From: Gracilinanus agilis
Lineage: Eukaryota
DNA length: 64,000 nt
NCBI RefSeq assembly: GCF_016433145.1
Contig: NC_058136.1
Coordinates: 70,953,779-71,017,778, forward strand
Direction of reading: 5' to 3'
The position numbers and the translations under genes are program-made. Each line of letters starts with the position of its first letter. The stretch's first letter is position 1. Positions 1,300 to 59,030 of the stretch are shown one piece after another. Under the pieces are notes generated by a model, which was not told where the DNA came from, did not search any database, and saw only the letters and a program-made list of their open reading frames with translations.

Positions 1300-1799
1300 N
1301 NNNNNNNNNNNNNNNNNNNNNNNNNNNNNNNNNNNNNNNNNNNNNNNNNNNNNNNNNNNNNNNNNNNNNNNNNNNNNNNNNNNNNNNNNNNNNNNNNNNN
1401 NNNNNNNNNNNNNNNNNNNNNNNNNNNNNNNNNNNNNNNNNNNNNNNNNNNNNNNNNNNNNNNNNNNNNNNNNNNNNNNNNNNNNNNNNNNNNNNNNNNN
1501 NNNNNNNNNNNNNNNNNNNNNNNNNNNNNNNNNNNNNNNNNNNNNNNNNNNNNNNNNNNNNNNNNNNNNNNNNNNNNNNNNNNNNNNNNNNNNNNNNNNN
1601 NNNNNNNNNNNNNNNNNNNNNNNNNNNNNNNNNNNNNNNNNNNNNNNNNNNNNNNNNNNNNNNNNNNNNNNNNNNNNNNNNNNNNNNNNNNNNNNNNNNN
1701 NNNNNNNNNNNNNNNNNNNNNNNNNNNNNNNNNNNNNNNNNNNNNNNNNNNNNNNNNNNNNNNNNNNNNNNNNNNNNNNNNNNNNNNNNNNNNNNNNNN
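1300..1799. other. Assembly gap (500 N)
   Basis: Exactly 500 N, the same size as two other gaps, so probably a placeholder of unknown true length. Confidence 0.95.
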
Positions 1800-27881
<26,082 letters not shown>

Positions 27882-36263: not shown

Positions 36264-36763
36264 NNNNNNNNNNNNNNNNNNNNNNNNNNNNNNNNNNNNN
36301 NNNNNNNNNNNNNNNNNNNNNNNNNNNNNNNNNNNNNNNNNNNNNNNNNNNNNNNNNNNNNNNNNNNNNNNNNNNNNNNNNNNNNNNNNNNNNNNNNNNN
36401 NNNNNNNNNNNNNNNNNNNNNNNNNNNNNNNNNNNNNNNNNNNNNNNNNNNNNNNNNNNNNNNNNNNNNNNNNNNNNNNNNNNNNNNNNNNNNNNNNNNN
36501 NNNNNNNNNNNNNNNNNNNNNNNNNNNNNNNNNNNNNNNNNNNNNNNNNNNNNNNNNNNNNNNNNNNNNNNNNNNNNNNNNNNNNNNNNNNNNNNNNNNN
36601 NNNNNNNNNNNNNNNNNNNNNNNNNNNNNNNNNNNNNNNNNNNNNNNNNNNNNNNNNNNNNNNNNNNNNNNNNNNNNNNNNNNNNNNNNNNNNNNNNNNN
36701 NNNNNNNNNNNNNNNNNNNNNNNNNNNNNNNNNNNNNNNNNNNNNNNNNNNNNNNNNNNNNNN
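36264..36763. other. Assembly gap (500 N)
   Basis: Exactly 500 N; the upstream contig ends in A/(AT)n. Confidence 0.95.
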
Positions 36764-39900: not shown

Positions 39901-42900
39901 AGGGCTGTGCAGCCTTGGGTCATCCCTGAATTTGCCCCCCAGGTGAGGATCCTTTGGTAGATGGCTACTCTGCTCATGACTTGGACTCTGTGGCTGGCGT
40001 ACTAAAACTCTATTTCCGTGGCCTGGAGACGCCACTTTTCCCATTAGAGATGTTTGGGGAGATGCTGGCTGCTGTGGGTAAGTGAGGTGTTGGGGCAGGG
40101 GCTAAGGTGGGCCTAAAGAGTGGCCGGGGAGGCAAATCGAAACGAGGGGAGCTGGGAGAAGGAGCAGTCGGAGTAATAAGGCCCCTGGGATATGGGGTAT
40201 TGGGGTCTGCAGATCTGGAGAGCCCTGGAGAACGGAGAGAATTCGTGAAGGGCATCGTGAGCCGCCTGCCGGGGCCAGTGCTGGTGGTCCTCCGTTATCT
40301 CTTTACCTTCCTCAATCAGTGAGTAGCCCCTCACCCCACCCTCCCTCAGGAGATGTCTTCTTCTCCTCCCCTACTTGGGCCACTGGCCAGAGGGGTCAGC
40401 AAGTGTCAGAGCTGGGAGGGCCCTTCGGGTTATCTCGTTGAACCCTTTCAGATTTGCCCTAAGTTTCTAAGACAGGCCTCCAGTTTCAGGAGGGCAGAAG
40501 GTGGCCAGAGGGGAACCCATGTGGGGTTGGTGCTGGTGGCGGGGGTGGTATAGAATCTGCTGGGGCTCCCCCTGGGGTCGAGTGCCCATCCACGTTCTGT
40601 TGTGTTCCACCTTATGTGCCGGTTCGAATTTGCGATGCTCAGCCTGGCCCAGTACAGTGATGAAAACATGATGGATCCTTACAACCTGGCTGTGTGCTTT
40701 GGGCCCACCCTAGTGGTTGTGCCACCCGAGCAGGACCCAGTGGCAGTGCAGAGCCGAGTAAACCAGCTGGTTCAGACCCTTATCTTAGAACCCGAGCTGA
40801 TCTTCCCAACCTCGACTGCACTTCCAGGGCCCCTCTATGAGAAGTGCATGGCCCCACCACATGACGATTTTGGGTAGGTTGGAGACATGCACCCCAGCTT
40901 CCCCCACCCCACTTTGTCAGGAACCTGGGGGAGGCCGGGAATAGAAGGTCCCCAAAGGACTCCCTGACTCCCAGTCCACTTGTACCCCCATGTAGAGACA
41001 CAGCTGTGTCTATTTCTGGGCCTGTACACCTCAGCCACTAGCAGGCTGAGCTAGGGGAGGCGGGGACGTCCCCCTCACTACCTTGGGTCTGACTTTCTGA
41101 CCTTGGCCTCAGGGATCCTCAGCTGGATGCCACAGCAGAAGAGAATGAGCAGGACCTGCCTGTGGAGACATCAGCCACTAAAGAGGGTGAAGCAGGGGGA
41201 CTCCAGACCCCTAACCCTGTCTGTCCCCCTTCCCTTCTGAGTACCATGAGAGGGCCTCCATCTTCTTAGACAGGATCCTGAGTCTTCCCCTGAATGCCCT
41301 TGACCCCCCTGCAGTCTCCCCGCCCCCTTGGCCAGTGCCTCACGTCTTCCCCCACCCTCTTCCCCACAGAGACTTCCATCCCAATCCCAGAGAGCTCCAA
41401 GGATGCCTCATATTGTTCGACCCCAGTCCTTGAGTGCGGGGAGTCTTTGGAGGCTGTGGCTTGCTTTGACTATGTAGGCCGCACACCCCAGGAACTTACT
41501 TTCCAGCGTGGAGATTTACTGTGTCTGCACACCCGAGCCTCCGGAGAATGGTGGCGTGGAGAGCATGCAGGCACCCTGGGGCTCATCCCCCACAAATATA
41601 TCAAGGTGCCTGACAAGTGAGTGAGAGCAGCCCTGGGAAGCCTTACTGGTTCAGGGCCTTCAGCCCCCTCCCTAAGACTCCCCGCCTGCTCCCATCTCCC
41701 AGTCTGTCTTGAGGGGAGATGCAGCCCAGAAGGCCTGCTTGAGTCTCTCCCCCACCTCCACATCCCTGTTCTGCTCTCCATGCCTCCTTGGGACCTGGCT
41801 TTTTCTAGAGGCCGAATCCAACCATCCCCGTTGTGTCCTTAGGGCAGAGAATCAAGCGGTTTTACAGGAGGGACAGGGAGAAGGCGAGCTGGTCCCCAAA
41901 AACGAGGACCCTGTAGTGGAGCCTGTGTGCCGGTGAGTGGAGGGAGCCCTTCGGGCTCACTGGGCAGCGTGGCAGCGGTATACCTCATGACCCACTCAGG
42001 ATTATGCTCACTAGGAGAAGCCAGTGCTCTGGTGGGCTGTGAAACCCCAGATTGGGCAGTCGAAGGCTTAGGCCGTTACCTCGGTTTGTTTCACAACTAA
42101 TTGGTGGGATGACCTTAAGGAGAGCCCTGCCCCCTTGCTAGGCCTCTGTGAAATAAGCAGCTTCTGTCCTCTGGGTTCCAAGGAATCTTCAGCCCTTGAC
42201 ATTCCAGGATTCTCAGATTCTGTGGGAAACTGACAAAACGGGCTATTCAGAGCTCTGGTGGGGCCTGGGGGGGGGGCGGATCTTGGTGAGCTTTGGGGGA
42301 CAGCAGGGTGGAGGGATCGAGGGATGTCAACAGGCTCTCTCTCACCCGCTGCCCCGTTCCATTCCAGAGTTCGCACAAATTCAGCAGGTACCTATAGCAA
42401 GGCTTCCTCCAAATCGAGAGGTGGCAAACTGACTTCGCCTTTTCTTGATCCTACCTACCACCCCATGGCAAGCGGCCGAGCTTTGTCGCCTTCTGACAGG
42501 TCAGCCCAAAGGGCGGAAACTCCTTGAAAGGGGAGGCTCCCCGAGGGAGAAAGGCAAGCCCACTCTCTTTGGTACCATGTTGGGTGGCCCCAGGGTGACC
42601 GTGTGCCCTTCTGCCCACCCCCACTCAATAATCCAGATCAGAACGCTGGAATGCAATGGATATGCCAGGTCCCTCTGGGTACAACTGGCACTGCCCGGCC
42701 ATCATCACCGGTGATAAGAAATGGGACAAATGGGACGCTGATAAGAAATGGGACACTGATAAGAAATGGGATGCTGATAAGAAATTGGAGGTCGATAAGG
42801 TGAGTGAGCCTGGCTTCCAGTGCAAAAGGGTGGTGTTCTCCGTGGCCCCATCTCTGGGACCTGAACTGGATCCCCCTTTCATCTCAGCTCTTTTTTCTCT

Positions 42901-44932
42901 TAGCCTTTCCTTTCCATCTTAGAATCAGTACTGTGTATTGGCTCCAAGGCAGAGGAGTGGTCAGGGCTGGGCCATGGGGGTCAAGTGACCTGCCCAGGGT
43001 CACCCAGCTGGGAAATGTCTGAGGACCGGGCTCCTGTCTCCAGGCCGGGCTCTCATTCCATTGAGCCACCCAGCGGCCCCCCTCAGCTCTTCTCATTTCT
43101 CTCTGCCCTCCCTTCTGATCCTTTCCTTTCTTCCCTTCCTCTCTTGGCTCCTTTTCTCCCCGATTTCTCCTTTTCAATTCAGCAGACCGAGTAAGTCTTC
43201 ACCGATTGCCTGTGCTGGGGAGGAGGGAGGAAGTCAGAGGGGCAATAATAATCCTCCGGAGACCTGCCCCTGGGGAGCTCCCAGTTTGTCTGGGGCTGTC
43301 GGCCTAACCCTTGAACAAAGAGAAGTGGCAGGACCACTTAGGCGATGGATAACTGCTGGGCCACAGATGCTGGGCTTAGGAGGGAAGCAGCCTCTTGGGA
43401 TGGCCAGGAAAGGCTCTTTTGGGGGAATTGCCGCTTGGATTGGGCCTTGGAGAACCAGCGGGAAGTCGGACATGGGAGGGACGGCGGAAAAGAAGGAGAT
43501 GGACGTTCTAGGTCAGGCGCAAGCCAGCCGGAGCCTGAGATACGAGGAGATGGGCTCGGCTGGAGTTCCAGGTAGAGGAGAGAGGGCCGAGGTTGTGCAG
43601 GGTCTCCACCGGCAGCCTATGGAGTCATGATCTCATCCTGTTGGCATTCGAGAGTCACTGGGGCTTCAAGAGGTGACATTGGGCCAGGCCTGGGTTGTAG
43701 GAAAATCACTTTGGCAGCCGTACGGAGGATAGATTAGAGTGGAGAGAGACTTGATGGGGCAGAGAGAGAGACCCATTAGGAGTCTGTGGCTCCAGGCCAA
43801 TGGAGAGATGATGACGCCCTGCTCTAGGGTGGTGGCCGAAAGGATGGAGATGGATACCGGAGATATTGACAACAGGGTATGATTGAGGTGGGGGCAGGGA
43901 GAAGAGCCAACAATGACTCAGGGTAGGAGCCTGGGCTAATGGGAAGATGGCGGTTGTGCCATTAACGGAATCAGGGAATTAGAAGAAAGAGAAGGGATGG
44001 GGAAAAGGACGAGCAGCTTTACTCGGGGACTTGGCAAGCTTGGAGGAGCTCTATGGAGCTAGCCGTGCGGCCGACAACCCAAAACTTGAACCTGGTGCTC
44101 GAGGACCAACTGAGGGCCAGACATGCAGATTTGGGCGGCCTGGGACCTCCTGCCTGAGGCCGTGATCACCGGAGCCTTGGGAGTGGAGGAGATTACCCTG
44201 AGGGGAAGGGGAGGAAGAGAGCCACCCAAGGGAACCCCAAAGGAGTTGTGCCAAGGAGGGGAAACCAAGGAGGGAGAGTTTCAAAGAGGAGGCACCAGAG
44301 CCCTCAGAGGGGCAAATGAGAGGCCAGAGGAAAGCCCAAAGTTGGGGACCTGGGAGAGGGGCGGCGGGGACCAAAGTCGGATTTCAGGGTGGCGGTGGCG
44401 GTGGCGGTGGCGGTGGCGGGGAGTGAAATGGGAACGATGGGCCTCTTGGCAAATGCCTGGCAGCCGAGTGGCCAATAGGGCAGCAGGGTTGTGGGGGAGA
44501 CCTGAGAAGAAGTATTCCCGGCTAGACAAGAAAGGAGATGGAGAAAGAAAAAAAGGGGACCCACTACTCCAATGGCTGGGTCCGAGGCACAAGAGGAGAG
44601 GGTGCTGGGTTGCTCTTTCTCAGACACCGGAGGGCAGAAATGGGTGAGGGTGGGAGAGATGTGTTTCCCACAAGCACCCTTCTCTTTGACTCCCGGTGAC
44701 TGACCTTCCCCCTCCCCACCCCCCCCAGAGCGTGGCCCAGAAGATGGAATCTGTCTTTAAAGAGCTCTTGGGAAAGGCTCATACCCGGCACCTGCCGAAG
44801 ACCTCAGAGATACTTTTGAGCTCCCCTGAGGCCTCCTGCTCCGCTGCACACAGCTGGTGGCCCCTGGGACCCTCCCGAGCTGGGAAGAACAAGGTTTTCT
44901 CTAGAGGCGCTGGGGGCCACGACCAGTTCTGA
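36955..44932 (+). CDS. ARHGAP4: Rho GTPase-activating protein 4, partial (last 15 exons: RhoGAP, SH3, tail); 5' F-BAR exons missing at the gap
   Basis: Exons 36955-37056, 37265-37456, 37576-37660, 37870-37897, 38633-38735, 39453-39513, 39765-39842, 39943-40077, 40213-40318, 40643-40873, 41113-41186, 41370-41616, 41843-41932, 42637-42799, 44729-44932 (1899 nt, in frame). Contains GLQHEGIFRVPG (arginine finger), LAQYSDENMMDPYNLAVCFGPTL, SH3 EAVACFDY...GEWWRGEH...GLIPHKYI and tail SVAQKMESVFKELLGK. Confidence 0.95.
42713..42799 (+). repeat. Coding 18-nt tandem repeat GATAAGAAATGGGAY(G/A)CT encoding (DKKWDx)n in ARHGAP4
   Basis: Read directly: GDKKWDKWDADKKWDTDKKWDADKKLEVDK, ending at the donor AAG|GTGAGT. 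Confidence 0.9.
42890..43085 (-). mobile_element. Marsupial SINE in the last ARHGAP4 intron
   Basis: ccatcttagaatcagtactgtgtattggctccaagg...ccacccagcggcccc. Confidence 0.75.
43330..44350 (-). mobile_element. Degraded L2 LINE
   Basis: Long purine-rich text typical of antisense L2; no intact ORF. Confidence 0.55.
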
Positions 44933-45052
44933 GCTCCTTTTCCGCCCCTGCTATTTCTTCACAGGTGTATGGGACCTCGCCTGTCTTCATTTACCTTAAC
45001 TCAAACCTTTCTGTCTACATTCCCTTTCCCTTTTTTCCTCTTGAAAAACCGG

Positions 45053-45058
45053 AATAAA
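45053..45058 (+). other. ARHGAP4: ARHGAP4 polyadenylation signal
   Basis: AATAAA about 120 nt after the stop codon. Confidence 0.65.
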
Positions 45059-45622
45059 GTTGAAGGTCCGGCGGGGCAAATGCTTGGCTCCCAAATCGCC
45101 ATCTCTCCACTGGCCCAGGAGGGCCCAGCGAGGCTTCCATTACTCCCACCAGTCATAGCCCACGTGACGTCGCTGGGGATGTGGGGGCGGCAGAGCGCCT
45201 GACGCACATTCTCTCACTTGGGCCCACAACCACCCTGGACATTCAGCCCCTCGGCTCCCCCTCCCAGAAGACATTGCCTCATCGCAGACAGACCGAGGTG
45301 CTCCCCAGCCGCAAACGACCTGCTGTCTTGTCTGGGGGCCGGTGGAAGGAGAGCTAAGCCCAAAGAAAAGGAGCCCGCTTCGTTAGCCTGCAAAGGGGGA
45401 CCGGATAAGCATTAAGTGCCTACTGTGTGCCAGGCATTGGGCTAAACACTTTACAAAGTGTAGGGCCTGTTATTGTTCCCATTTTACAGTTGAGGAAACT
45501 GAGGCAAGTAAGTACCTTGACCAGGACCAGATAGCCAGTGAGGTTGGATTTGAAGCCCAGCACACCATCCACTGAGCCACCATCTCCAGAAGCTCTGGCT
45601 TAACTGGGAGTCCTATCAGGAA

Positions 45623-45721
45623 TACTACTACTACTACTACTACTACCACTACTACCACTACTACTACCACTACCACTACCACTACCACTACTACTACTAC
45701 TACTAACTACTACTACTACTG
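45623..45721. repeat. (TAC/CAC)n trinucleotide microsatellite
   Basis: Direct. Confidence 0.95.
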
Positions 45722-46559
45722 TAGCAAAGTGGTATACATTAGAGAAGCACAGCAACCCTGGGAAGGAGATGCTATCATGATCCTCACTTTCCACATAAGG
45801 AAACTGAGGCAGACTACGATTAAGTGACTTTCCCAGGGGTAAGAGTCACAGTCAGGTTGGAACTCGGCTCCCTCTCGGAGGAGCCTGGTGATTCAGGTAA
45901 AGGAGGAGTCCCGTCAGGTAGCAGGTACCCAAGTGGGAAGGGGAGGGAGATTGCCCCAGATGTTCTTGGAGGATGCCAGGAATGGGCAGGGGGTTTCCAG
46001 AGGTACGGAAGAAAGGGCTCCATCTCTGCCTCCCCTGCCACCTTCAGCATTACTAAATAGGGAATAGAGGGGAGAAAATGGGGAGGCTGCTAGGTATGAG
46101 ATGGTGCCCAGGAGGGCAGCCGGGGAGACCAGGAGTAGGAAGGAGACGGTCTCGGTCTCACCCCTAAGCTAAGGCCTACAGCTATGAGCTCCCCTTCTTC
46201 AAGGCAGGCCAGGGAGAGTGATTCTGGGAGAGGACGCGGAGGGGAGGGCATCCTAACATGGGGAATTAGTCAAGGGGCAAACAAAGACTGTTGGGATCAG
46301 GCCAAAATGCCATTCACTGGCCCAACTGGCCCAGGTACCAAATCCTGTGGATTGGGCATCCCAGCATTTCTCCTGTCTGCCCTTCCTCACATCCCCCCTC
46401 ATGGCTGGTGGGGATCAGTGGTCGCCCCCTTTTTGGTCCCCTGCCTCATAGCATCCCAGACTCTCCGGCTGGGGGTTCGGAGGTCATCTGGTTCTGCCCA
46501 GAGCAGACCCAGCATGCCCTTCTGCAGTATCCCCACCAGGGAGTCACCCAGAGGGCCCA

Positions 46560-47200
46560 AAGTATACAGAAGACTGCCACCTCCTGATGCTCTTGGGGCC
46601 GGAGGAAACGAGTCTAATCCAGCTTCCCCAAGAGAGCTGTGCAGCCATTTGAGGACCCCCCATGCCATTCTCCGGGAATCCTCCTGGAGTTGCTCCGTGC
46701 ATGTCCTCCTCAAGCTTTGGGGCCCAGAACTGCCTGCAGTCCTCCGGGTGTGGCCTGGCCAGGGTGGGGGGCGGCAGGACTTCAGGCCTCTTCTCCTTCA
46801 GAGCCCTCCGCCTGCCTTGATGCAGCTCCATATTGAATTGGCGGCCCCGGCCGCCTCCACTGTCTCCTCTCCCAGCTAGCCTGTTTGAGCTTCCCGATGA
46901 CCTGATTAAGTCGCTCCCACGAGCCAAAGCCTTTCCACCGCCTGCAGGATGAAACCAAAATGGCATCGGGAGCTCTCGGAAATGTGGCCCCGGCCTTGGC
47001 GTGCCATGCTTGCCCACCCGAAGGCCCCCTCTGGTCCAAGCAGGCCTCCCAGCTGCCCCGCACTCCAGGCTTGGGCGGTCCTTCGCAGCCCCGGACCGTA
47101 CACTCTCTTCTTTGCCTGGCCCAGTTCTCGCTGGCCCAGCCTCACTTGGGCAGCCACAGGGGCCTCCCCAGATCTCCAGACAGTTCCATCTGGGAATGAC
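46560..47200 (-). mobile_element. Old CR1/L3 LINE ORF2 fragment
   Basis: Minus-strand translation LARPHPEDCRQFWAPKLEEDM resembles CR1 ORF2 [21 protein letters not shown]. Confidence 0.7.
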
Positions 47201-47694
47201 CGGCAGGGCCAGGGCCTCTGGGAGCGGACCCCGAGGTGGGGGATGAGCCAAGGGGCAAGCCCTGCCGATTCCACTCCCTCTGAGCTCACAGCCGGCCTTC
47301 CTCGCACCCCTCACTAGGGCTTCTTTGGAGGGGGTGCCCGAGGTAGGGCTACGCTGGGCCGCTGAGGGAGGAGGGGAGGAGGGGGGTCAGGAACCTCTTG
47401 GGCCGGCAGGTAAACTGGCCGGGGAGGAGTCGGGCAGAGTGGCCTGCCCTGACGTCAGGAGCGGAGCCAAGTCATGGAAAAACTATCCCAGCAGAGGCTG
47501 GAGCTGTAATAAACAGGGCGAGAACAATAGGTGGGGGCAGTGGAAGCTGGGGGAGGGGGGGCTGCCTGGCTCCCACAGGAGATCCATCAGGGGAGGGGGA
47601 GACTCCAGTGGGCTGGAGAGGCCCTGCGAAGGGCTCCTCCTCCCTCTGGGCAGACCTCTCGGCCTTCCTGCACAGAGGGATGGATGGGGGGGGG

Positions 47695-50600
47695 TGTACT
47701 TCTGTGTGTTTCTTCGGGTCTGTGTCTGTGCACGTCTGTACATGCGTGTGTGTATTTGTGTATAAATCTGTTTTGGGTGCCTGTGTCTATGTGTATTTGT
47801 GCGTGTCTATTTGCATGGATCTATGTGTCTCTTTATGTGTCTGTCTATGTGTTTGTATATGTGTGTGTATTTGTGCATGTATGTATTTGTGTGTCTGTGG
47901 TTTTATGTGTGTATCTGTGGGTCTGTGTATTTGTGTATGTATCTGTGTGTCTATGTGTTGTTTGTGTCTGGATATGTATATTTGTGCATGTCTGTATTTG
48001 TGTGTATCTCTGTTTCTTTATGTGTGTGTATCTGTGTGCCCATATTTTGGTGTGTCTGTGTGTGTGTATCTGTGTGTGTCTGTGTTGTGTGTGTCTGTGT
48101 ATTTGTACATGTCTGTATTTGTGTGTATCTGTGGTTTTATGTGTATCTGTGTCCACATGTCTGTATGTGTGTCTGTCTTGTCGTGTGTCTGTGTGTCTAT
48201 GTGGTTTTATGTGTGTGTATCTGTGTGTCTATGTGTGTATGTGCCTGTGTTTGTGTAAGCATATCTTATGTGTCTATGTGTTGTGTGTGTGTCTATGTGT
48301 ATTTGTGCATGTATGTGTATTTGTGTGTATTTCTGTGTTTATGTGTTTCTTTGTGTCTATGTGGTTTTATGTGTGTGTATCTGTGTGTCTTGTTTGTCTA
48401 TGTGTTGTGTATGTCTATGTGTATTTGTGCGTGTCTGTGTGTCTGCGTTTCTTTATGTGTCTGTAGGTCTATGTGGGTTTATGTGTGAATCTGTGTGTCT
48501 GTGTGCTCATATATCTGTATTTGTGTCTATGTGTGTTGTGCGTGTTTGTGCATGTGTATCTGTGTGTCTATGTGTGTCCATATGTCTGTGTGTCTGTTTG
48601 TGTATGCATATCTTATGTGTCTGTGTTGTGTGTGTCTATGTGTTTCTATATGTATTTGTGCATGTCTGTGTATCTGTGTGTCCATGTGTATCTTTATGTG
48701 TCTATGTGGTTTTATGTGTGTGTATCTGTGTGTCTTTGTGTGTCCGTATGCCTGTGTGTCAATGTGTATCTTGTTTGTATATGTGTTGTGTGTGTCTATG
48801 TGTATCTATGTGTATTTGTGCATGTCTGTGTGTCTGTAGGTCTATGTGGTTTTATGTGTGTATCTGTGTGTGTCTTTGTGTGTTGTGTGTTGTGCATGTG
48901 TATCTGTAAGTCTGTCTATGTGTTGTGTGTGTCTGTGTGTTTGGCTATGTGTATTTGTGTGTGTCTGTGTTTCTTTATGTGTCTGTGTGTCTATGTGGTT
49001 TTATGTGTGTGTATCTGTGGGTCTGTGTATCTGTGTATGTATCTGTGTGTGTCTATGTGTTGTGTGTCTGTCTAGGAATGTGTATTTGTGCATGTCTGTA
49101 TTTGCGTGTATCTGTGTCTGTGTTTCTTTATGTGTCTGTGTGTCTATGTGGTTTTATGTGTGTATCTGTGGGTCTGTGTATTTGTGTATATATCTGTGTG
49201 TGTCTCTAAGTGTATGTGTATGTGTATTTGTGCATGTCTGTATTTGTGTGTATCTGTATGTCTGTGTGTTTATGTGTCTGTGTGTCTTTGTGGTTTTATG
49301 TGTGTATCTGTGGGTCTGTGTATTTGTATATGTATCTGTGTGTCTATGTGTGTCCATGTGTCTATGTGTTTGTGTGTGTTTGTGTGTCTGTGTTGTGTGT
49401 CTCTGTCTGTGTATTGGTGCGTGTCTGTATTTGTGTGTATCTGTGTGTGTCTGTGGTTTTATTTGCGTGTATCTTTGTGTTCGTATTTCTGTGTGTCTGT
49501 GTGTTCTTGTGTTGTGTGTGTCTCTGTGGTTTTATGTGTGTATTGGTGGGTCTGTGTGTCCGTATTTCTGTGTGTCTATGTGTGTTTGTGTGTGCATGTG
49601 TATCTGTGTGTCCATGTGTTGTGTGTCTCTTTTTGTATGTGTATTTGTGTGTATCTGTGTGTTTCTTTATATGTCTCTGTGTCTATGTGGTTTAATGTGT
49701 GTGTATCTGTGTGTGTCTGTCCGTATTTCTGTATGTCTATGTGTGTTTGTGTGTGTCTGTGTATTTGTGCATGTCTGTGTATGTGTATTTGTGTGCATGT
49801 CTGTGTGTTTATGTGTCTGTGTATCTATGTGTGTTTGTGTCTGTGTTGTGTGTGTGTCTGTGTATTTGTATGTGTCTGTATTTGTGTGTATCTCTGTGTT
49901 TATGTGTCTGTGTGTCTATGTGGTTTTATGTGTGTGTATCGGTGGGTCTGTGTATCTGTGTGTGTCTATGTGTTGTGTGTATTTGTATTTGTGCATGTCT
50001 GTATTTGTGTGTATCTGTGTCTGTGTGTTTATGTGTGCATATCTGTGTCCGTATGTCTGTATGTGTGTCTGTCTGTGGTGTGTATATGTGTATTTGTGCG
50101 TATCTGTGTGTCTATGTGTCTATGTGGTTTTATTTGTGTGTATCTGTGTGTCTGTGTATATCCGTATGCCTGTGTGTCTATGTGTATCTTGTTTGTCTAT
50201 GTGTTGTGTGTCTATGTGTGTTTGTGCGTGTCTGTGTTTCTTTATGTCTCTGTGTGTCTATGTGGTTTTATGTGTGTATCGGTGTGTCTATGTGTGTCCA
50301 CATGTCTGTGTGTCCATACGTGTGTGTCTGTGTTTGTGTATGCATGTCTTATGTGTCTGTCTATGTGTTGTGTGTCTGTGTATTTGCGTGTGTCTGTTTG
50401 TCTATGTGGTTTCATGTGTGTGTATTTGTGAGTCTGTGTATTTGTGTATGTATCTTTCTGTGTCTATGTGTGTCCGTGTGTGTGTCTAAGTATTGTTTGT
50501 ATATATACGTGTATGTGTATTTGTGTGTATCTGTGTGTTTCTTTATGTGTCTTTGTGTCTATGTGGTTTTTTGTGTGTAGCTGTGGGTCTGTGTATTTGT

Positions 50601-53600
50601 GTATATATCTGAGTGTGTCTATGTGTTTCTGTGTGTATGTGTTGTGTGTGTCTCTCTGTGTATGTGTATGTGTATTTGTGCATGTCTGTATTTGTGTGTA
50701 TCGGTGTGTGTCTGTGTGTTTCTTTATGTGTCTGTGTCTATGTGGTTTTATGTGTGTATCTGTGTGTGTCTATGTATCCGTATTTCTATGTGTCTGTATC
50801 TGTGTATTTGTGTGTCTGTATCTGTGTGTATCTCTGTGTGTGTTTATTTACGTGTCTGTGTATTTGTGTGTGTATCTGTGTGTCTATGTAGTTTTATGTG
50901 TATGTATATGTGTGTCTATGTGTTGTGTGTGTATTTGTGCATGTCTGTATTTGTGTGTATCTGTGTTTGTGTGTTTCTTTATGTGTCTGTGTATCTGGTT
51001 TATGTGAGTGTCTGTGTGTCCATATTTCTGTGTCTGTGTTTGCGTGTGTATGTGTATCTGTGTGTTTCCTTATGTGTCTGTGTGTCTATGTGGTTTTATG
51101 TATGTATCTGTGTGTCTGTGTATTTGTGTATATATCTGTGTGTATCTGTGTTTGTATGTATGTGTATTTGTGTGTGTCTGTGTTTGTGTGTATCTGTGTG
51201 TGTTTCTTTATGTGTCTGTGTGTCTGTGGTTTTAGGTGTGTGTATCTCTGTGTGTCTATGTGTTCCCACATGTCTGTATGTATGTCTATGTATTGTGTGT
51301 GTTTGTGAATGTGTATCTGTGTGTCTGTCTGTGTTGTGTGTGTCTGTGTGTTTGGCTGTATGTATTTGTGCGTGTTTGTATTTGTATGTGTCTGTGTTTC
51401 TTTATGTGTCTGTCTATGTGGTTTTACATGTGTGTATCTGTGTGTCTATGTGTGTGTTTGTGTGTGCATATCTTATGTGTCTGTCTATGTGTTGTGTGTA
51501 TGTGTGTCTATGTGTATTTGTGCATGTCTGTGTATCTATGTGTTTATGTGTCTGTGTGGTTGTGTCTGTGTGTCTGTGTGTCTATGCGTGTCCACATTTC
51601 TGTATGTGTGTCTATATGTCTGTGTATTTGTGTTTGTGTGTGCTTATCTTATGTGTCTATGTGTTGTGTGTCTATGTGTATTTGTGCATGTCTGTGTATT
51701 TGCTTGTATCTGTGTGTCTCTTTATGTGTCTGTGTCTCTATGTGGTTTTATGTGTGTGTATCTGTGGGTCTGTGTATTTGTGTATGTATCTCTCTGTGTC
51801 TAAGTGTGTCCATATGTGTGTATGTGTATTTGTGCATGGCTGTTTTGTGTGTGTATCTGTGTTTCTTTATGTGTCTGTGTGTCTTTGTGGTTTTATGTGT
51901 GTATCTCTGGGTCTGTGTATTTGTGTATGTATCTGTGTGTCTATGTGTTGTGTGTGTCTGGGAATGTGTATTTGTGCATGTCTGTATTTGCGTGTATCTG
52001 TGTCTGTGTGTTTCTTTGTGTCTGTGGGTNNNNNNNNNNNNNNNNNNNNNNNNNNNNNNNNNNNNNNNNNNNNNNNNNNNNNNNNNNNNNNNNNNNNNNN
52101 NNNNNNNNNNNNNNNNNNNNNNNNNNNNNNNNNNNNNNNNNNNNNNNNNNNNNNNNNNNNNNNNNNNNNNNNNNNNGCATGTCTTTTTGTGTGTATCTGT
52201 GTGTGTCTGTGTGTCTATGTGGTTTTATGTGTGTATCTCTGGGTCTGTATATTTGTGCATATATCTGAGTGTGTCTGTGTGTCTGTGTATTTGTGCATGT
52301 CTGTATTTGTGTGTGTCTGTGTTTCTTTATGTGTCTGTGTGTCTATATGGTTTTATGTGTGTATTTGTGGGTCGGTGTATTTGTGTATGTATCTGTGTGT
52401 GTCTATGTGTGTCCGTGTGTTTGTGTGTGTGTCTGTGTCTGTGTATTTGTGCGTGTCTATTTGTGTGTATCTGTGTGTGTGTTTCTTTATGTGTCTGTGT
52501 GTCTATGTGGATTTATGTGTGTATCTGTGGGTCTGTGTATATATCTGTGTGTGTCTATGTGTGTCCGTGTGTTTGTGTGTGTCTGAGTGTTTGTGTGTGT
52601 GTCTGTGTCTGTGTATTTGTGTGTGTCTATATTTGTGTGTGTTTCTTTATGTGTCTGTGTGTCTGTGTGGTTTTATGTGTGTGTATCGGTGGGTCTGTGT
52701 ATCTGTGTATGTATCTGTGTGTGTCTATGTGTTGTGTGTATGCGTTATTTGTGCATGTCTGTATTTGTGGGTATCTGTGTCTGTATCTGTGTCCATATGT
52801 CTATGTGTGTTGTGTGTGTATGTGTATCTTGTGTGTCTGTCTGTGTTGTGTGTGTCTGTGTATTTGTGCGTGTCAGTATTTGTGTGTATCTGTGTGTGTC
52901 TGTTTCTTTATGTGTCTGTGTGTCTATGTGGTTTTATGTGTGTGTGTCTGTGTGTCTCTGTATGTCTGTATGTGTATCTGTGTGTGTTGTGTGTGTTTGG
53001 CTATGTGTATCTGTGTGTCTATATGTTTCTTTATGTGTCAGTGTGTCTATGTGATTTTATGTGTGTGTTTCAGTGGGTCTGTGTATTTGTGTACGTATCT
53101 GTGTGTGTCTATGTGTGTCCGTATGTCTGTATGTGTGTCTATGTGGTTTTATGTGTGTGTCTGTGTATGCATATCTTATGTGTCTGACTGTGTTGTGTGT
53201 CTATGTGTGTCTATGTGTATTTGTGCATGTCTGTGTATTTTGTGTATGTGTGTTTATGTGTGTGTATCTGTGTCTATGTGTGTCCATATGTCTGTGTCTG
53301 TGTGTCTATGTGTATTTGTGTGTGTCCCTATATCTGTGTGTCTGTGTGTTTCTTTATGTGTCAGTGTGTCTATGTGATTTTATGTGTGTATATCTGTGTG
53401 TCTATGTGTGTCCGTATGTCTATATGTGTTTGTGTATGTGCATCTGTGTGTCTGTGTTTGTGTATTTGTGTGTTTCTTTATGTGTCTGTGTGTCTTTGTG
53501 GTTTTATGTGTGTTTCTGTGTGTCTGTGTGTGTCCGTATGTCTCAGTGTGTTTCTGTGTGTATCTGTATGTGTCTGTGTGTCTACGTGTTTTGTGTTTGT

Positions 53601-54495
53601 GTATTTGTGTCTCTGTTTATGTCTGTGTGTTTGTGTGTGTATGTCTATGTTTTTTCTATTTGTTGGTATATCTATGTGTGTCTATATGTGTCTATATGTC
53701 TATGTGTATTTGTGTGTATCTCTGTGTTTATGTCTTTGTGTGTGTCTATGTGCATGTGTGTATGTCTGTGTGTGTCTATATGGTTTTGTGTGTATCTGTG
53801 GGTCTGTGTGTTTGTGTGTGTCTATGTGTTTGTATGTGCACATGTGTTTGTGTGTATATCTCTGTGTTTGTGTCTATGTGTGTGTTTGTGTGTTTCTTTG
53901 TGTCTCTGTGTTTACGTGCATGTGTGTATGTTTGTGTCTGTTTTGTGTGTGTCTATGTAGTTTTGTGTGTATTTGTGTATCTATGTATTTGTGTGTATAT
54001 GTGCTTGTGTATGTCTATGTGTGTTTGTGTGTCTGTGTGTGTTTGTATGTATTTGTGTCTGTCTGTGTGTGTTTGTGTGTATCTATGTGTTTGTATATGT
54101 GTGTGTCTTTGTGTGTGTCAATGTGTCTGTGTGTATGTCTGTGTCTACGTGTGTTTGTGTGTATGTCTGTGTCTACGTGTGTTTGTGTGTATGTCTGTGT
54201 ATTTGTGTCTATGTTCATGTGTGTGCCTATTTTTTGTGTGTCTATGTATCTGTGGGTCTGTGTTTGTGTGTATATCTGTGTCTGTGTGTTTGTGTCTGTG
54301 TCTATGCGTGTTTATATGTATCTTTGTATGTGCTTGTGTGTCTGTGTGTTTCTGTGTATCTGTGTATTTTTGTGTGTCTTTGTATGTGTGTTGGTGTGTT
54401 TGTGTGTCCGTGTGTCTATTGCGGGTGTCTGTGTTTTGTGTCTGTGTGTTTCTGTGTGTCGGTGTCTGTGTCTGTCTGTCTGTCTGCCTATCTGT
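47695..54495. repeat. ~6.8 kb TG-rich complex tandem array with ~140-155 bp higher-order unit
   Basis: Built from TGTG, TATCTG, TATTTGTG, CATGTCTG and TTTCTTTATG modules. The landmark GTGGTTTTATG recurs roughly 30 times by eye, e.g. near 48706, 48845, 48995, 49149, 49290, 49454. Confidence 0.95.
52030..52176. other. Assembly gap (147 N) inside the TG-rich array
   Basis: Run of N. Confidence 0.95.
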
Positions 54496-54959
54496 CGTGC
54501 TCTGGGCTTGTCTCTTGGAGCCCATGGCCTTGTGGGTAGGTTTCTGGCTTCTGGGCATGTTCATAGTCACCTCCTTGCACCCATCCCACCCTCCCACCCT
54601 TCCCAGTGAAAGGAAACTCCCTGATGGGGAGGTTTATTGAGCTAACCTAACTGCCTCAGGGTAGACCATCCATCCATCCATCCATGCATGCATGCATGCA
54701 GCCATGTGTACAAATGTAGGCGGGGGGCTGAGGGCCCGCCTACACACTGGGGTTTGACTGCCAAAGGGGGGGGGAAGGGATGTCCTCCCCCATTGCCCTC
54801 CCCTCTCCCCTGTACCCCCTGCTCCCGGGCTTGCCGCCGTCCAAGGGAAAATAATCTGCGAGTGTCCTGGCATGTGGTCTGGGCCCTTCGGTATACACCT
54901 GGGGAATCTTGGGTCGAGCAAGGGGAAGCGATGGGCCAATGCGAGTCCCCTCACTCCCA

Positions 54960-55460
54960 TTAATGAATCCATCAATCAGCAAGCATTTATTAAGCCCCTA
55001 CTATGTGCCAGGCACCGAAGATACAGGGAAAAAGGGAGGCCGGTCGTGGCCCTCAAAGAACTTGCCATCTCCCCTAAGAAGTAGATCTGGGATCTCTGCA
55101 GAATAAATACACAGAACTAAGTGGGGAGAATCAGGAAAGTCTCCTGGAAGAGGCGGCCCCGGAGGGAGCTAGGGATTCCCGGAGACGGAGCATTCCAGGC
55201 CTAGACTATTAAGCAACCTAATGGATGCCTTTGGAGTGTCAGGAGGAGGGATGGAGAGCCAGACCGGGAGGACCTTGAAAGGCTAAACAGAGGAGTCTCG
55301 TTACCCTTGAGGCACCGGGGCACTACTGAGGCTTCTCGGGAGCAGGGGCATGACACGGGCACACCTGGCCTTTAGGAATGGCAGGCCGTGCTGGGTGGGA
55401 GATGTTGGCTTGGGCACGGAGCTGGATCTCTGGGCTTTCTGGAGTCCAGGAAGACCGGTC
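54960..55460 (-). mobile_element. L2 3' remnant within or near the AVPR2 3' UTR
   Basis: atcaatcagcaagcatttattaagcc-ctactatgtgccaggcac is the reverse complement of the L2 3' terminus. Confidence 0.6.
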
Positions 55461-55486
55461 ACTGCCCCCACGGTCTTCCGGGGACC

Positions 55487-57973
55487 TCAGGACGACGTGT
55501 CCTTGGTGAGAGAGGAGCTGGCGGTTATGCAGGAGTCGTCGGGGGCACCGAGGCTGGCCAAAGGAGGTGGCCGGGAGCAGCAGAGGAGGCTTCGGAGCTC
55601 AGAGGACACGCTGCTGCTGAAGGTGGCGTAGATCCAAGGGTTGGTGAAGCTGTTGAGGCTGGCCAGAAGCATGAGCAGCACAAAGGGTGGCCCTGAGAAG
55701 AAGGCAGAAGCCAGAAGGGAGGTGAGCAGCAGACAAGAGGAGCACTCGTTGGGGGAGACAGAAGGTGCCCGCGGGACGGTGGAGAAATGGCAGAGCTATG
55801 GGAACCACAGGCTAGGGGGCAGAACGGGGTGGAGGTGTAGGAGAAGGGACAGAGAGGGGCCGCAGGGGTCTGGGCTGGCAGAGTAGGGGGCTCTTCCCTC
55901 TCCCTGCCAAGTGGACCAAGGGGGAGGCAAGGCTGAGGACCAGGATGGGGGCCGAGGGGGTGTCTGCGTGTGCCTCTGAGTGTGTGCGGTAAGGTGTCGG
56001 TGGGCAGAAATGACACAGCCCTCTGGGCACCAGACGTGTGGTGGTCCGAACGTACCCTGAAACTTACCTTCCCGGGGTGCCTGGGGGTCCCACACTGACC
56101 ACAGCTGCACCAGGAAGAAGGGTGCCCAACACAGTACGTACACAATCACTATCACCAAGGTCATTCTCACTGTCTTGGCCATGGCTGCGGAGACTCGGGC
56201 ACCCTCGCCAGGCCCCACGCCACTGGCCCTCGGGGACAGGCTGGCATGGATCTCCCGGAAGATGAGCACCTGGCAGGCAGCAATGCCTGCGGCTGGTGCC
56301 ACAAACACCATTAGAGCAATCCAAGTAACATAGGCCCGGAGCCCCCAGGGCTCGATAAAGAGGGCCCAGCAGTCGAGGGTGCCAGTGTCATCCTCTACCT
56401 CTTGTTGGCTGAAGATGAAGAGTTGGGGCAGGCTGAAGATCAACGAGAGGGCCCACGCCACCAGGATGGGCCTGTTCCAGTGGGCCCCACCATGGCGGAA
56501 TGCCAACATGGGGCGGCAGATGGCTCGATGGCGGTCCAGGGTCATGGCCAGGATCATGTAGGAGGAAGCGTACATGCCCACCATCTGCAGATACTTGACG
56601 GCTCGGCATAGAAAGTCGGGACCCTGGAAACGGTCCGTGATGTCCCAGGCCAGCTGTGGGAGCACCTGGAACAGGGCCACGGCCAAATCGGCCAGACACA
56701 GGTGGCCGATGAAGACGTGCATAGGGGCCCATCGGCCTCTCTGGCCCCTGCGGGCCAAGGCCCCCAGCACCAGTATATTGCTCAGTGTTATGCACACAAA
56801 CATGGCTGCCAGCAGTGCCACCTCAGCCTGGGCCAACCATGGGTTCCTTGAATCGCCATTGCTGGTGTTGCCAGGGAGACTGCCATTGGAGAGGGACCCA
56901 GGGGCTGCTGGGAAATGGAGAGAGGCAGGGAGAAATGAGGGCCCTGGATAAAAGGGAGGGGGGGCGTGGATCTTGTTCTAATTAGAGCCCACCTTGAGTC
57001 CATTGGAAAAAGGCCGAGCAGGGACACGAATTTAGAGGGTGGGGTGGCCTTGAGGGCCAGCTCTTTCTTCCCTCCCCTGTTCTCATTCCCAGTAGCGGCT
57101 TCCAGTGACCTGAGCTGGAACTTTCAGAGAATGCTGCTCCTCTCATTAGGGAACCGTGGGAGGTGGAGAGCTAGGGATTTGACTCATCGGACTCAGTTTC
57201 CTACTCCGTAAAATGAGCCGGAGAAGGCATGGCAAAGCTTTCTGGTCTCTGCCAGGAAAATCCCAAATGGGGTCACAACAACAGCATTCGTAGGCTCGTG
57301 GGACCCCACACCAAAGAGCCAGAAGGCAGCTTGGAGACCATCGCGTCCAGCCTTCTCGCTTTTTAGAGGAGGAAACTGAGGTCCAGGCAGGGGAAGGATT
57401 TTGCCCAAGGCCATACACGTAGGATCCAAGTCAAATCTCATTTTACATAGGTAGAAACTGAGGCCCATAAGGGGAAGTGATTGCCCAAAGCCGCATGGGT
57501 AGGAAGTAGCAGAGACCGAACTGGAACCCAAGTCCAAATCCACTTTGTTCCGTACAGCCCACGTTAGCCTCTATTCCTACCCGCTTCAGATACGCCTCGT
57601 GAGCGTTCCTCATCTCTGTTCTATCTGGGCAGACAGGCAAGAGGCAGGGTTCTGCCATTGGTCATTGGGTGGGATCCCCCCAAGACAGAGTGTGGGGTGG
57701 CCATGGGCCCCCACCACATTCCAGCTCCCAGGAAGCAGCTGGGGAGAATGGAATCTAGGTAGGACAAGGTATGCTGAGACTCGGGAAAGCAAGGGATGGG
57801 TGTGTTGGGTGGGGAAGTGGTGTGGCCCTGCTCTCTGTGACTCCCTCCCCGCCCCCTGCCGCCAGGCCCCTCCGGCCTTCTCTCTTCATTCCCCTTCTCT
57901 CTTTGCCCTCGCCCCCTTGAGCACGCCAAGCAGGCGGTGGAGCCTTACCTGACGCTGTAGAAGTTTTCAGCAT
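55487..57973 (-). CDS. AVPR2: Vasopressin V2 receptor, complete, 3 exons, 356 aa
   Basis: Exon 1 57973-57949 (25 nt, MLKTSTAS, donor GTAAGG), exon 2 56907-56068 (840 nt), exon 3 55692-55487 (206 nt). Motifs [42 protein letters not shown], palmitoylation CC and C-terminal KDTSS. Confidence 0.97.
57170..57545. mobile_element. MAR1-like and MIR-like SINE remnants in AVPR2 intron 1
   Basis: ctcagtttcct...gaaggcatggcaaa...aaaatcccaaatggggtcac; gaggaaactgagg repeated twice. Confidence 0.6.

Positions 57974-58482: not shown

Positions 58483-58530
<48 letters not shown>
58483..58530. repeat. (GT)n microsatellite upstream of AVPR2, runs into a gap
   Basis: Direct. Confidence 0.95.
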
Positions 58531-59030
58531 NNNNNNNNNNNNNNNNNNNNNNNNNNNNNNNNNNNNNNNNNNNNNNNNNNNNNNNNNNNNNNNNNNNNNN
58601 NNNNNNNNNNNNNNNNNNNNNNNNNNNNNNNNNNNNNNNNNNNNNNNNNNNNNNNNNNNNNNNNNNNNNNNNNNNNNNNNNNNNNNNNNNNNNNNNNNNN
58701 NNNNNNNNNNNNNNNNNNNNNNNNNNNNNNNNNNNNNNNNNNNNNNNNNNNNNNNNNNNNNNNNNNNNNNNNNNNNNNNNNNNNNNNNNNNNNNNNNNNN
58801 NNNNNNNNNNNNNNNNNNNNNNNNNNNNNNNNNNNNNNNNNNNNNNNNNNNNNNNNNNNNNNNNNNNNNNNNNNNNNNNNNNNNNNNNNNNNNNNNNNNN
58901 NNNNNNNNNNNNNNNNNNNNNNNNNNNNNNNNNNNNNNNNNNNNNNNNNNNNNNNNNNNNNNNNNNNNNNNNNNNNNNNNNNNNNNNNNNNNNNNNNNNN
59001 NNNNNNNNNNNNNNNNNNNNNNNNNNNNNN
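58531..59030. other. Assembly gap (500 N)
   Basis: Exactly 500 N following a (GT)n run. Confidence 0.95.

What the first reader, a model, noticed from the sequence alone, without database searches (positions are those of the whole stretch)
47695..54495. ~6.8 kb strand-asymmetric TG-rich higher-order array between the 3' ends of ARHGAP4 and AVPR2
Seen: this is not a simple (TG)n. A limited set of modules repeats with a ~140-155 bp period (GTGGTTTTATG landmark), and the + strand is T/G-rich and nearly free of CpG and AA. It ends ~140 nt from a candidate AVPR2 poly(A) signal (54633-54638). Known (recalled): in human the two genes end within a few hundred bp of each other; here they are ~9.5 kb apart. 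Inference: a lineage-specific expansion that could act as a Z-DNA-prone or nucleosome-phasing insulator between convergent genes. If transcribed on +, it would be a multivalent UG-rich scaffold for TDP-43/CELF proteins, like the repeat domains of Xist or marsupial RSX; on -, it would be CA-rich (hnRNP L).
Basis: partly seen in the sequence, partly recalled or inferred. Interest (0 to 1): 0.7.

Follow-up and report, generated by a model that had tools for sequence, protein, structure and literature searches.

The report
Degenerate TG-rich tandem array, opossum
A real 6.8-kb block of about 50 loosely repeated, T/G-rich 120-160-bp units fills the gap between the tail ends of the ARHGAP4 and AVPR2 genes of an opossum, and it looks like ordinary non-coding repeat expansion: nothing here shows that it is transcribed or acts as an insulator.

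Summary
Window 47695-54495 is a one-stranded T/G-rich tract (T 52%, G 29%, C and A under 10% each). It is a tandem array, not a (TG)n microsatellite. A profile built from its own units tiles it with 56 hits, all on the + strand, and 31 of them are full length. Self-matches of 100-480 bp at 80-95% identity far exceed Markov controls. The common spacing is 140-162 bp. There is no regular higher-order period: units average 60% identity, neighbours are no closer than distant units, and subfamilies are interspersed.

The array lies between convergent ARHGAP4 (+) and AVPR2 (-). The AVPR2 exons are identical to Gracilinanus agilis. That published assembly was built from 100-bp linked reads, so array length and unit order are not confirmed by long reads. 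The internal N gap hides about 90-105 nt plus an unknown number of units.

The functional readings are weakened or untested:
- no (TG) run of 6 or more;
- longest alternating purine/pyrimidine run 23 bp;
- no 10-bp helical periodicity;
- no CTCF motif, no Rfam match, no RNA structure;
- no RNA run on record holds it.

Cross-species comparison and read laying were not possible. Most likely it is a neutral, cryptically simple minisatellite-like expansion. Interest is low.

The parts
47695..52029 (+). Left part of the TG-rich tandem array, about 30 units, up to the assembly gap. The first ~200 nt are the most decayed.
   Evidence: profile hits tile 47702-52028 on the + strand only.
48706..49290 (+). 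Best-preserved run of four consecutive units (140, 149, 153 and 142 bp), each starting at the GTGGTTTTATG landmark.
   Evidence: highest profile scores, 78-93 bits; self-match at lag 153, 89% over 242 bp.
52030..52176 (.). Assembly gap of 147 N inside the array. Its true length is unknown, and it was not filled.
   Evidence: the flanks are the same family and strand. The register implies about 90-105 nt plus n units missing.
52177..54495 (+). Right part of the array, about 20 units. After ~53500 the landmark is lost and the units are more decayed. It ends in a short (GTCT)n run.
47508..47513 (+). AATAAA, candidate distal poly(A) signal for ARHGAP4, ~180 nt before the array. A proximal one lies at 45053-45058.
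   Evidence: Use of either signal is not shown.
54633..54638 (-). AATAAA on the - strand (reads TTTATT on +), candidate distal AVPR2 poly(A) signal, 138 nt from the array. Another lies at 54986-54991.
   Evidence: Use of either signal is not shown.
55487..55795 (-). Open frame holding the AVPR2 last coding exon (TM7 with NPWIY and the C-terminal tail). The stop codon is at 55487-55489.
   Evidence: The tail is identical to the G. agilis V2 receptor P0132.
56066..56836 (-). AVPR2 main coding exon, taken from ORF 55796-56836. Residues 1-257 of the ORF match the receptor.
   Evidence: V2 receptor structures, E 1e-132; 256/257 identical to G. agilis; the single difference is the ORF tool's start codon.
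41294..41620 (+). ORF holding the ARHGAP4 SH3-domain exon. It shows that ARHGAP4 runs on the + strand toward the array.
   Evidence: the best PDB match is the human ARHGAP4 SH3 domain (2epd, E 1.6e-23).

Best explanation
This is a non-coding, strand-asymmetric, degenerate tandem array, of minisatellite- or satellite-like class. About 50 units of roughly 120-160 bp are present, and each is itself made of short interrupted T-N dinucleotide motifs (TG, TC, TA). The array sits in the intergenic spacer between the convergent 3' ends of ARHGAP4 and AVPR2 on the X-homologous chromosome of the opossum Gracilinanus agilis.

Most likely origin (inferred): a cryptically simple TG-rich seed was amplified by unequal exchange or replication slippage at the ~145-bp scale. 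Later duplications of 2-3-unit blocks and long mutational decay followed, so that units now average only ~60% identity. It is tolerated because the tail-to-tail gap between two genes holds no promoters.

Its only probable effect is passive: it moves the two gene ends ~7 kb apart. The shown steps are its existence, anatomy, strand bias, position, and lack of coding or structural signals. The origin mechanism and neutrality are inferred.
For: - Real repeat family: profile hits tile the whole tract on one strand and occur nowhere else in the 64-kb window. Self-matches far exceed Markov order 2-8 controls.
- Old and decayed: mean unit identity is 0.60 and the maximum 0.84. Neighbours are no more alike than distant units, subfamilies are interspersed, and both edges are more decayed.
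- No coding signal: the long + strand ORFs (470 and 418 aa, Cys/Val-rich) exist only because stop codons need A. There are 5-8 stops per frame in 4.3 kb of the + strand against 36-48 on the - strand. They have no Pfam match.
- No known RNA family. No RNA structure beyond shuffles: z +0.32 on +, and MFE -0.8 kcal/mol for 296 nt on -.
- No CTCF motif and no helical periodicity.
- CpG obs/exp stays at or below about 0.5 everywhere in 43-58 kb, so no adjacent CpG island stands out.
- Not a collapse or stutter artefact on either side of the gap: 99.7% of 48-mers are unique within the array, and the longest exact internal repeat is 51 bp.
Against: - Neutrality is an absence-of-evidence argument. No expression, chromatin or cross-species data could be obtained.
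- The sharp ceiling at (TG)5 is far below Markov expectation, so the pattern of interruptions is not simple random decay of a microsatellite. It may reflect copying of an already interrupted unit, instability of longer runs, or a limit of the short-read assembler.
- The + strand carries 26 TGCATG (3.9 per kb against 0.24 per kb elsewhere in the window) and 173 TGTNTGTNTGT matches. These would be protein-binding motifs if the strand were transcribed.
- Array length and unit order rest on a 100-bp linked-read assembly (PMC8390783).
Confidence: 0.72

Rival explanations
1. Functional termination buffer between convergent genes. On the + strand the array is a 6.8-kb GU-rich, positively GC-skewed tract just downstream of an ARHGAP4 poly(A) signal. 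It could bind CstF-type GU/U-rich-element factors, or favour pausing or R-loops. ARHGAP4 read-through would then stop before reaching AVPR2, which would limit transcriptional interference.
For: - Position between convergent 3' ends.
- AATAAA at 47508 lies ~180 nt before the array.
- GC skew of about +0.5 runs throughout the array.
- Established knowledge, not tested here: GU-rich downstream elements and terminal GC skew are linked to 3'-end processing and termination.
Against: - Downstream elements normally act within a few tens of nt of the cleavage site, not over kilobases.
- G clusters, which favour R-loops, are nearly absent: 23 GGG in 6.65 kb.
- In human the same gene pair functions with almost no spacer (PMC1657029).
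- No transcription data are available.
Confidence: 0.1
2. The array is transcribed, either as a long ARHGAP4 3' extension or as its own lncRNA. It would then act as a multivalent UG-rich (+) or CA-rich (-) protein scaffold, binding TDP-43, CELF and RBFOX on +, or hnRNP L on -.
For: - High motif density on +: 361 GTGTGT, 173 TGTNTGTNTGT, 26 TGCATG and 79 (TG)4-5 runs.
- The - strand RNA would be essentially unstructured and single-stranded.
Against: - No run on record as RNA holds the array's words.
- No CpG island stands out in 43-58 kb, and nothing seen next to the array suggests its own start.
- No (UG)6 or longer run, which is the threshold for tight TDP-43 binding (PMC2665213).
- Unit divergence of ~40% and irregular lengths argue against constraint.
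- RSX repeats have a different composition (PMC6633197).
Confidence: 0.05
3. Partly an assembly artefact. TG-rich units do exist at the locus, but their number, order or even placement is wrong, because the array was assembled from 100-bp linked reads and contains a gap.
For: - The assembly method was stLFR 2x100 bp, Supernova, GapCloser and Hi-C (PMC8390783).
- There is an N gap inside the array.
- Only 5-15% of sampled 31-mers were found in any public run's contigs.
- The three long CA/GT microsatellites elsewhere in the window are all 46-48 bp. This hints at assembler-limited repeat lengths; that these lengths are close to the assembler's word size is recalled, not checked.
Against: - 99.7% of 48-mers and all 60-mers are unique within the array, so 100-bp reads span every internal exact repeat and the path on each side of the gap is unambiguous.
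- There are no near-identical stutter copies; the best long self-match is 92%.
- Both edges grade into unique flanking sequence within the same contig.
Confidence: 0.12

Closest known systems
Minisatellite / VNTR-type and low-copy satellite-like tandem arrays built from cryptically simple sequence
   Same: Head-to-tail units on one strand. The unit is itself made of short simple motifs. Unit length is variable, the edges are decayed, and the location is intergenic.
   Different: The unit (~145 bp) is longer than classic minisatellites of 10-60 bp. Copies are much more diverged (mean 60%) than in actively homogenised arrays. The strand bias is extreme.
(TG)n/(CA)n microsatellites (Z-DNA-prone, TDP-43 / hnRNP L binding tracts)
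   Same: The TG dinucleotide dominates (1775 TG, 1761 GT), and T sits at every second position over long stretches.
   Different: No run exceeds (TG)5, and interruptions by C, A or TT come every 2-10 nt. True (CA)23-24 microsatellites occur elsewhere in the window.
Higher-order repeat arrays (alpha-satellite type)
   Same: A monomer of roughly nucleosome size, with several monomer subfamilies.
   Different: There is no fixed multi-monomer period, and no high identity between blocks. Identity does not depend on unit offset.
Repeat domains of RSX / Xist lncRNAs
   Same: A kilobase-scale tandem repeat on the X-homologous chromosome. If transcribed, it would be motif-dense.
   Different: RSX repeats carry G/C-run, AAAG/GAAA and pyrimidine motifs, and they are transcribed and conserved between opossum and koala (PMC6633197). 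Here there is no evidence of transcription, no CpG island and a different composition.
X-linked CTCF-binding macrosatellites (DXZ4/FIRRE type; recalled, not tested against sequences)
   Same: A tandem array on the X chromosome proposed to act in chromatin organisation.
   Different: No CTCF core motif even at 2 mismatches, low GC (39%) and short units.

Membership tests
Tandem repeat array (minisatellite/satellite-like) | Head-to-tail copies of one unit in one orientation | tested here: met
   56 profile hits tile 47702-54491, all on the + strand.
Tandem repeat array (minisatellite/satellite-like) | Copy similarity beyond what composition gives | tested here: met
   70 self-HSPs of 100 bits or more, against 0-0.3 in Markov order 2-8 simulations.
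Simple (TG)n microsatellite | Long uninterrupted dinucleotide run | tested here: not met
   The longest run is (TG)5, while Markov models expect 11-33 runs of 6 or more.
Higher-order repeat (alpha-satellite type) | Fixed multi-monomer period, with block-to-block identity far above monomer-to-monomer identity | tested here: not met
   Identity is flat at 0.60-0.64 for unit offsets 1-8. Long self-matches have irregular lags of 1.4-4.0 kb at 80-92%.
Z-DNA-forming tract | Long alternating purine-pyrimidine run (roughly 24 bp or more of TG/CA; threshold recalled from the literature) | tested here: not met
   The longest alternating run is 23 bp. Only 2 runs reach 20 bp and 15 reach 16 bp. Pure TG runs are 11 bp or shorter.
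Nucleosome-positioning / phasing array | Regular unit length and ~10.3-bp dinucleotide periodicity | tested here: not met
   Landmark-to-landmark intervals range from 93 to 348 bp. The spectra show period 2 and a weak 8-10 signal, with no sharp helical peak.
CTCF-type insulator / DXZ4-like macrosatellite | CTCF core motif in the units | tested here: not met
   0 matches to CCASYAGRKGGCRSY with up to 2 mismatches in the array.
RSX/Xist-like repeat-domain lncRNA | Transcribed from its own promoter | not testable with these tools
No CpG island stands out in 43-58 kb.
RSX/Xist-like repeat-domain lncRNA | Repeat motif content like the RSX repeats | tested here: not met
   RSX repeats have G/C-run, AAAG and pyrimidine motifs (PMC6633197). 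This array is T/G-rich with 9.6% C.
High-affinity TDP-43 target | (UG)6 or longer | tested here: not met
   None is present. Reported Kd values are 3060 nM for (UG)3, 115 nM for (UG)4 and 14 nM for (UG)6 (PMC2665213). The array has 184, 72 and 7 runs of n = 3, 4 and 5.
Protein-coding gene | ORF with a family match, or codon signal not explained by composition | tested here: not met
   The 470-aa Cys/Val-rich ORF has no Pfam hit. Stop codons are scarce on + only because A is scarce.

The most novel reading that the evidence does not exclude
The array is a transcribed, X-linked, multivalent GU-rich RNA domain. It would be either a long ARHGAP4 3' extension or an independent lncRNA. Its ~80 (UG)4-5 runs, 173 UGUNUGUNUGU motifs and 26 UGCAUG sites would concentrate TDP-43, CELF or RBFOX proteins. 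The strict ceiling at (UG)5 would be selected to keep binding weak and multivalent, or to keep the DNA stable.
Probability: 0.04. Interest if true: 0.6.

Novelty: new member of a known kind. Interest (0 to 1): 0.2.

Why it matters
As it stands, the value is mainly for annotation. The array explains why two genes that almost touch in human lie 7-9.5 kb apart in this opossum. It warns that the 400+ aa ORFs inside it are compositional artefacts. It also flags a stretch whose length rests on a short-read assembly with an internal gap.

It would matter more in two cases. Long reads could show a much larger or polymorphic array. Stranded RNA data could show regulated transcription. Either way, it would then be a natural test case for how convergent X-linked genes are buffered, or for GU-rich scaffold RNAs.

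Tried and rejected
The Rfam scans covered 43000-47800 and 47900-55500, and the folds used 48995-49290. Local scripts did read the whole window file.
No cross-species test was therefore possible.
3. The look-up of sequencing runs gave only small shares: 0.15 in one run of unknown kind, and 0.05-0.06 in five runs guessed to be DNA, under two other organism codes. With TG-rich 31-mers these shares cannot be interpreted without laying reads.
4. The repeat finder was swamped by the low-complexity background. TRF alone under-reports the long unit.
5. A landmark search allowing 4 mismatches was unspecific.
6. Rfam gave nothing. Pfam on flanking and array ORFs gave nothing.
7. Literature searches on this locus in marsupials or on marsupial TG-rich satellites found nothing specific.
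8. Scan-note searches found no similar array noted elsewhere in this genome.
9. The longer AVPR2 isoforms of Monodelphis and Petaurus were checked for C-terminal extensions into a CA-rich strand. Their extra residues are N-terminal, so they say nothing about the array.
The exons were handled separately, by reference.
Full report
**What is there**

Window 47695-54495 is a sharply bounded tract. Its + strand is 52% T, 29% G, 9.6% C and 9.2% A. GC skew is about +0.5 and AT skew about -0.7 throughout, and GC content is about 39% against 55-67% in both flanks.

AA (14 occurrences), GA, AG and GG are strongly under-represented. CpG obs/exp is 0.27, which is no lower than in the flanks. A and C sit almost entirely in the 'G phase' of a T-N-T-N alternation, and period 2 dominates every spectrum.

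**Not a microsatellite**

No (TG) run exceeds five repeats. The run-length distribution for n = 1 to 5 is 232, 334, 184, 72 and 7. Markov chains of order 1-5 trained on the array expect 11-33 runs of six or more, and none of 200 simulations per order had zero. Order 6 still expects 3.8.

True (CA)23-24 and (GT)23 microsatellites exist elsewhere in the window.

**A real long-unit tandem array**

- TRF mostly reports periods of 2, 8, 10 and 18, plus a few local arrays of 103-127 bp.
- The lag histogram of shared 14-mers peaks at 140-144, 150-154 and 158-162 bp.
- A profile seeded from four adjacent units and then rebuilt from 31 full-length copies tiles 47702-54491 with 56 hits. All are on the + strand, and no significant copy lies elsewhere in the 64 kb.
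- Self-BLAST gives 70 off-diagonal matches of 100 bits or more. They run up to 481 bp at 80-95% identity. Markov order 2-8 simulations give 0-0.3.
- The landmark GTGGTTTTATG occurs 21 times. About half of the intervals between unit starts are 113-163 bp. The others are about 1.5 or 2 units where the landmark has decayed.

**No regular higher-order repeat**

- The 31 full-length units average 60% identity, counting gaps as mismatches, with a maximum of 84%.
- Identity is flat at 0.60-0.64 for unit offsets 1-8.
- Several subfamilies are interspersed. One has members at 48995, 49149, 51091, 51742, 51888, 52220, 52350 and 52667. The pair 48706/50124 is another.
- Blocks of 2-3 units recur at irregular distances of 1.4-3.7 kb.
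- Both edges are the most decayed, and the landmark disappears after about 53.5 kb.
- This is the picture of an old array shaped by occasional internal duplications, not of an actively homogenised HOR.

**The gap**

Before the gap, the sequence stops at unit position about 137 of 140. After it, the sequence resumes at about position 88 and runs into a landmark at 52219.

Both sides are therefore the same family in the same orientation. The missing piece is about 90-105 nt plus an unknown number of ~145-bp units. The 147 N are only an estimate.

**Context and source**

- ORF 55796-56836 (-) matches solved V2 vasopressin receptor structures at E 1e-132.
- The last coding exon ends with a stop at 55487-55489.
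- Both exons are identical to the Gracilinanus agilis V2 receptor. The Monodelphis protein differs at several residues. The window is therefore G. agilis or something indistinguishable from it, in line with an earlier scan note that called it an opossum.
- ORF 41294-41620 (+) holds an SH3 domain whose best solved match is human ARHGAP4. The two genes are thus convergent.
- Candidate poly(A) signals lie at 45053 and 47508 on the + strand, and at 54986 and 54633 on the - strand. The array fills most of a spacer of 7.1 to 9.6 kb.
- In human, a 5,995-bp deletion removes all of AVPR2 plus the last ARHGAP4 exon (PMC1657029).

**Reliability of the assembly**

The published G. agilis assembly was made from 2x100-bp stLFR linked reads with Supernova, GapCloser and Hi-C scaffolding. 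Its contig N50 is 57 kb (PMC8390783). No long read stands behind the array.

Internally, 99.7% of 48-mers and all 60-mers are unique within the array, and the longest exact repeat is 51 bp. Each side of the gap is therefore an unambiguous path for 100-bp reads, and there are no stutter copies.

An assembler would also drop or collapse exactly the parts that are not unique. The true length can therefore only be equal or larger, and it remains unconfirmed.

Public-run look-up found only small shares of the array's 31-mers: 0.15 in one run of unknown kind, and 0.05-0.06 in five runs guessed to be DNA. No holder was on record as RNA. I kept those places out of all later search-tool calls.

**Tests of the proposed functions**

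- *Z-DNA.* The longest alternating purine/pyrimidine run is 23 bp. Only 2 runs reach 20 bp and 15 reach 16 bp. Pure TG runs are 11 bp or shorter. The potential is weak.
- *Nucleosome phasing.* Units are irregular in length, and there is no sharp ~10.3-bp periodicity of any dinucleotide tested.
- *CTCF-type insulation.* There are no core-motif matches with up to two mismatches.
- *Known RNA families.* None was found.
- *RNA structure.* The + strand folds no better than shuffles (z +0.32). The - strand is essentially unfolded, at -0.8 kcal/mol for 296 nt.
- *TDP-43.* Published affinities rise from 3060 nM for (UG)3 to 115 nM for (UG)4 and 14 nM for (UG)6 (PMC2665213). The array offers 79 runs of (UG)4-5 and none longer. 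Only low-to-medium-affinity multivalent binding is conceivable.
- *Other motifs.* The + strand also carries 173 TGTNTGTNTGT matches and 26 TGCATG (3.9 per kb against 0.24 per kb elsewhere in the window). These are simply parts of the repeated unit.
- *RSX analogy.* RSX repeat domains are characterised by G/C-run, AAAG/GAAA and pyrimidine motifs, and they are conserved between koala and opossum (PMC6633197). The likeness is limited to 'a tandem repeat on the X'.
- *Coding.* The 470- and 418-aa + strand ORFs are Cys/Val-rich artefacts of A-poor sequence. They have no Pfam match.

**Verdict**

The tract is a genuine, strongly strand-biased, degenerate tandem array of about 50 units of ~145 bp between convergent gene ends.

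The best-supported reading (about 0.7) is a neutral, cryptically simple repeat expansion tolerated in a promoter-free tail-to-tail spacer. Its only likely effect is distance.

- a termination buffer for ARHGAP4 read-through (about 0.1);
- a transcribed GU-rich scaffold (about 0.05);
- substantial mis-assembly of length or order (about 0.12).

The one feature that is not trivially explained is the strict ceiling at (TG)5. It may come from copying an already interrupted unit, from the instability of longer runs, or from limits of short-read assembly. Interest is low.

Noticed in passing
window 4260-4305, 5092-5139, 58484-58529: The three long CA/GT microsatellites in the window are all 46-48 bp (23-24 repeats). 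The third abuts a 500-N scaffold gap. These lengths are close to the word size I recall for the Supernova assembler (48; recalled, not checked), so they may be assembler-limited rather than true lengths.
   Followed up: partly
window 55487-56836 (-): Both AVPR2 coding exons are identical to the Gracilinanus agilis V2 receptor (XP_044538530.1) and differ from Monodelphis at several residues. The window is therefore from G. agilis, whose assembly is short-read based (PMC8390783).
   Followed up: yes
window 45623-45720: (TAC)32 trinucleotide repeat at 85% matches, in the unique spacer between the proximal ARHGAP4 poly(A) signal and the array. It produces poly-Val and poly-Ser ORFs on the - strand.
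   Followed up: no
window 54666-54705: Short (CCAT)n/(GCAT)n compound microsatellite, just inside the region between the two candidate AVPR2 poly(A) signals.
   Followed up: no
window 53197-54609 and 53384-54640 (+): ORFs of 470 and 418 aa, rich in Cys, Val and Leu, run through the array. They exist only because stop codons need A, and they have no Pfam match. Gene finders could mis-call them.
   Followed up: yes
window 47695-54495 (+): TGCATG, the RBFOX-type hexamer, occurs 26 times (3.9 per kb against 0.24 per kb in the rest of the window). It is part of the unit segment ATTTGTGCATGTCTGT.
   Followed up: partly
window 45059-47694: 2.6 kb of GC-rich (50-67%) unique sequence lies between the two + strand AATAAA signals. 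It has no Pfam-matching ORF and no Rfam match. Whether it is ARHGAP4 3' UTR or intergenic is open.
   Followed up: partly
window 1300-1799, 36264-36763, 58531-59030: Three N runs of exactly 500, against one of 147 inside the array. The 500-N runs look like fixed-size scaffolding joins and the 147-N run like an estimated gap. This fits the assembly pipeline described in PMC8390783.
   Followed up: partly
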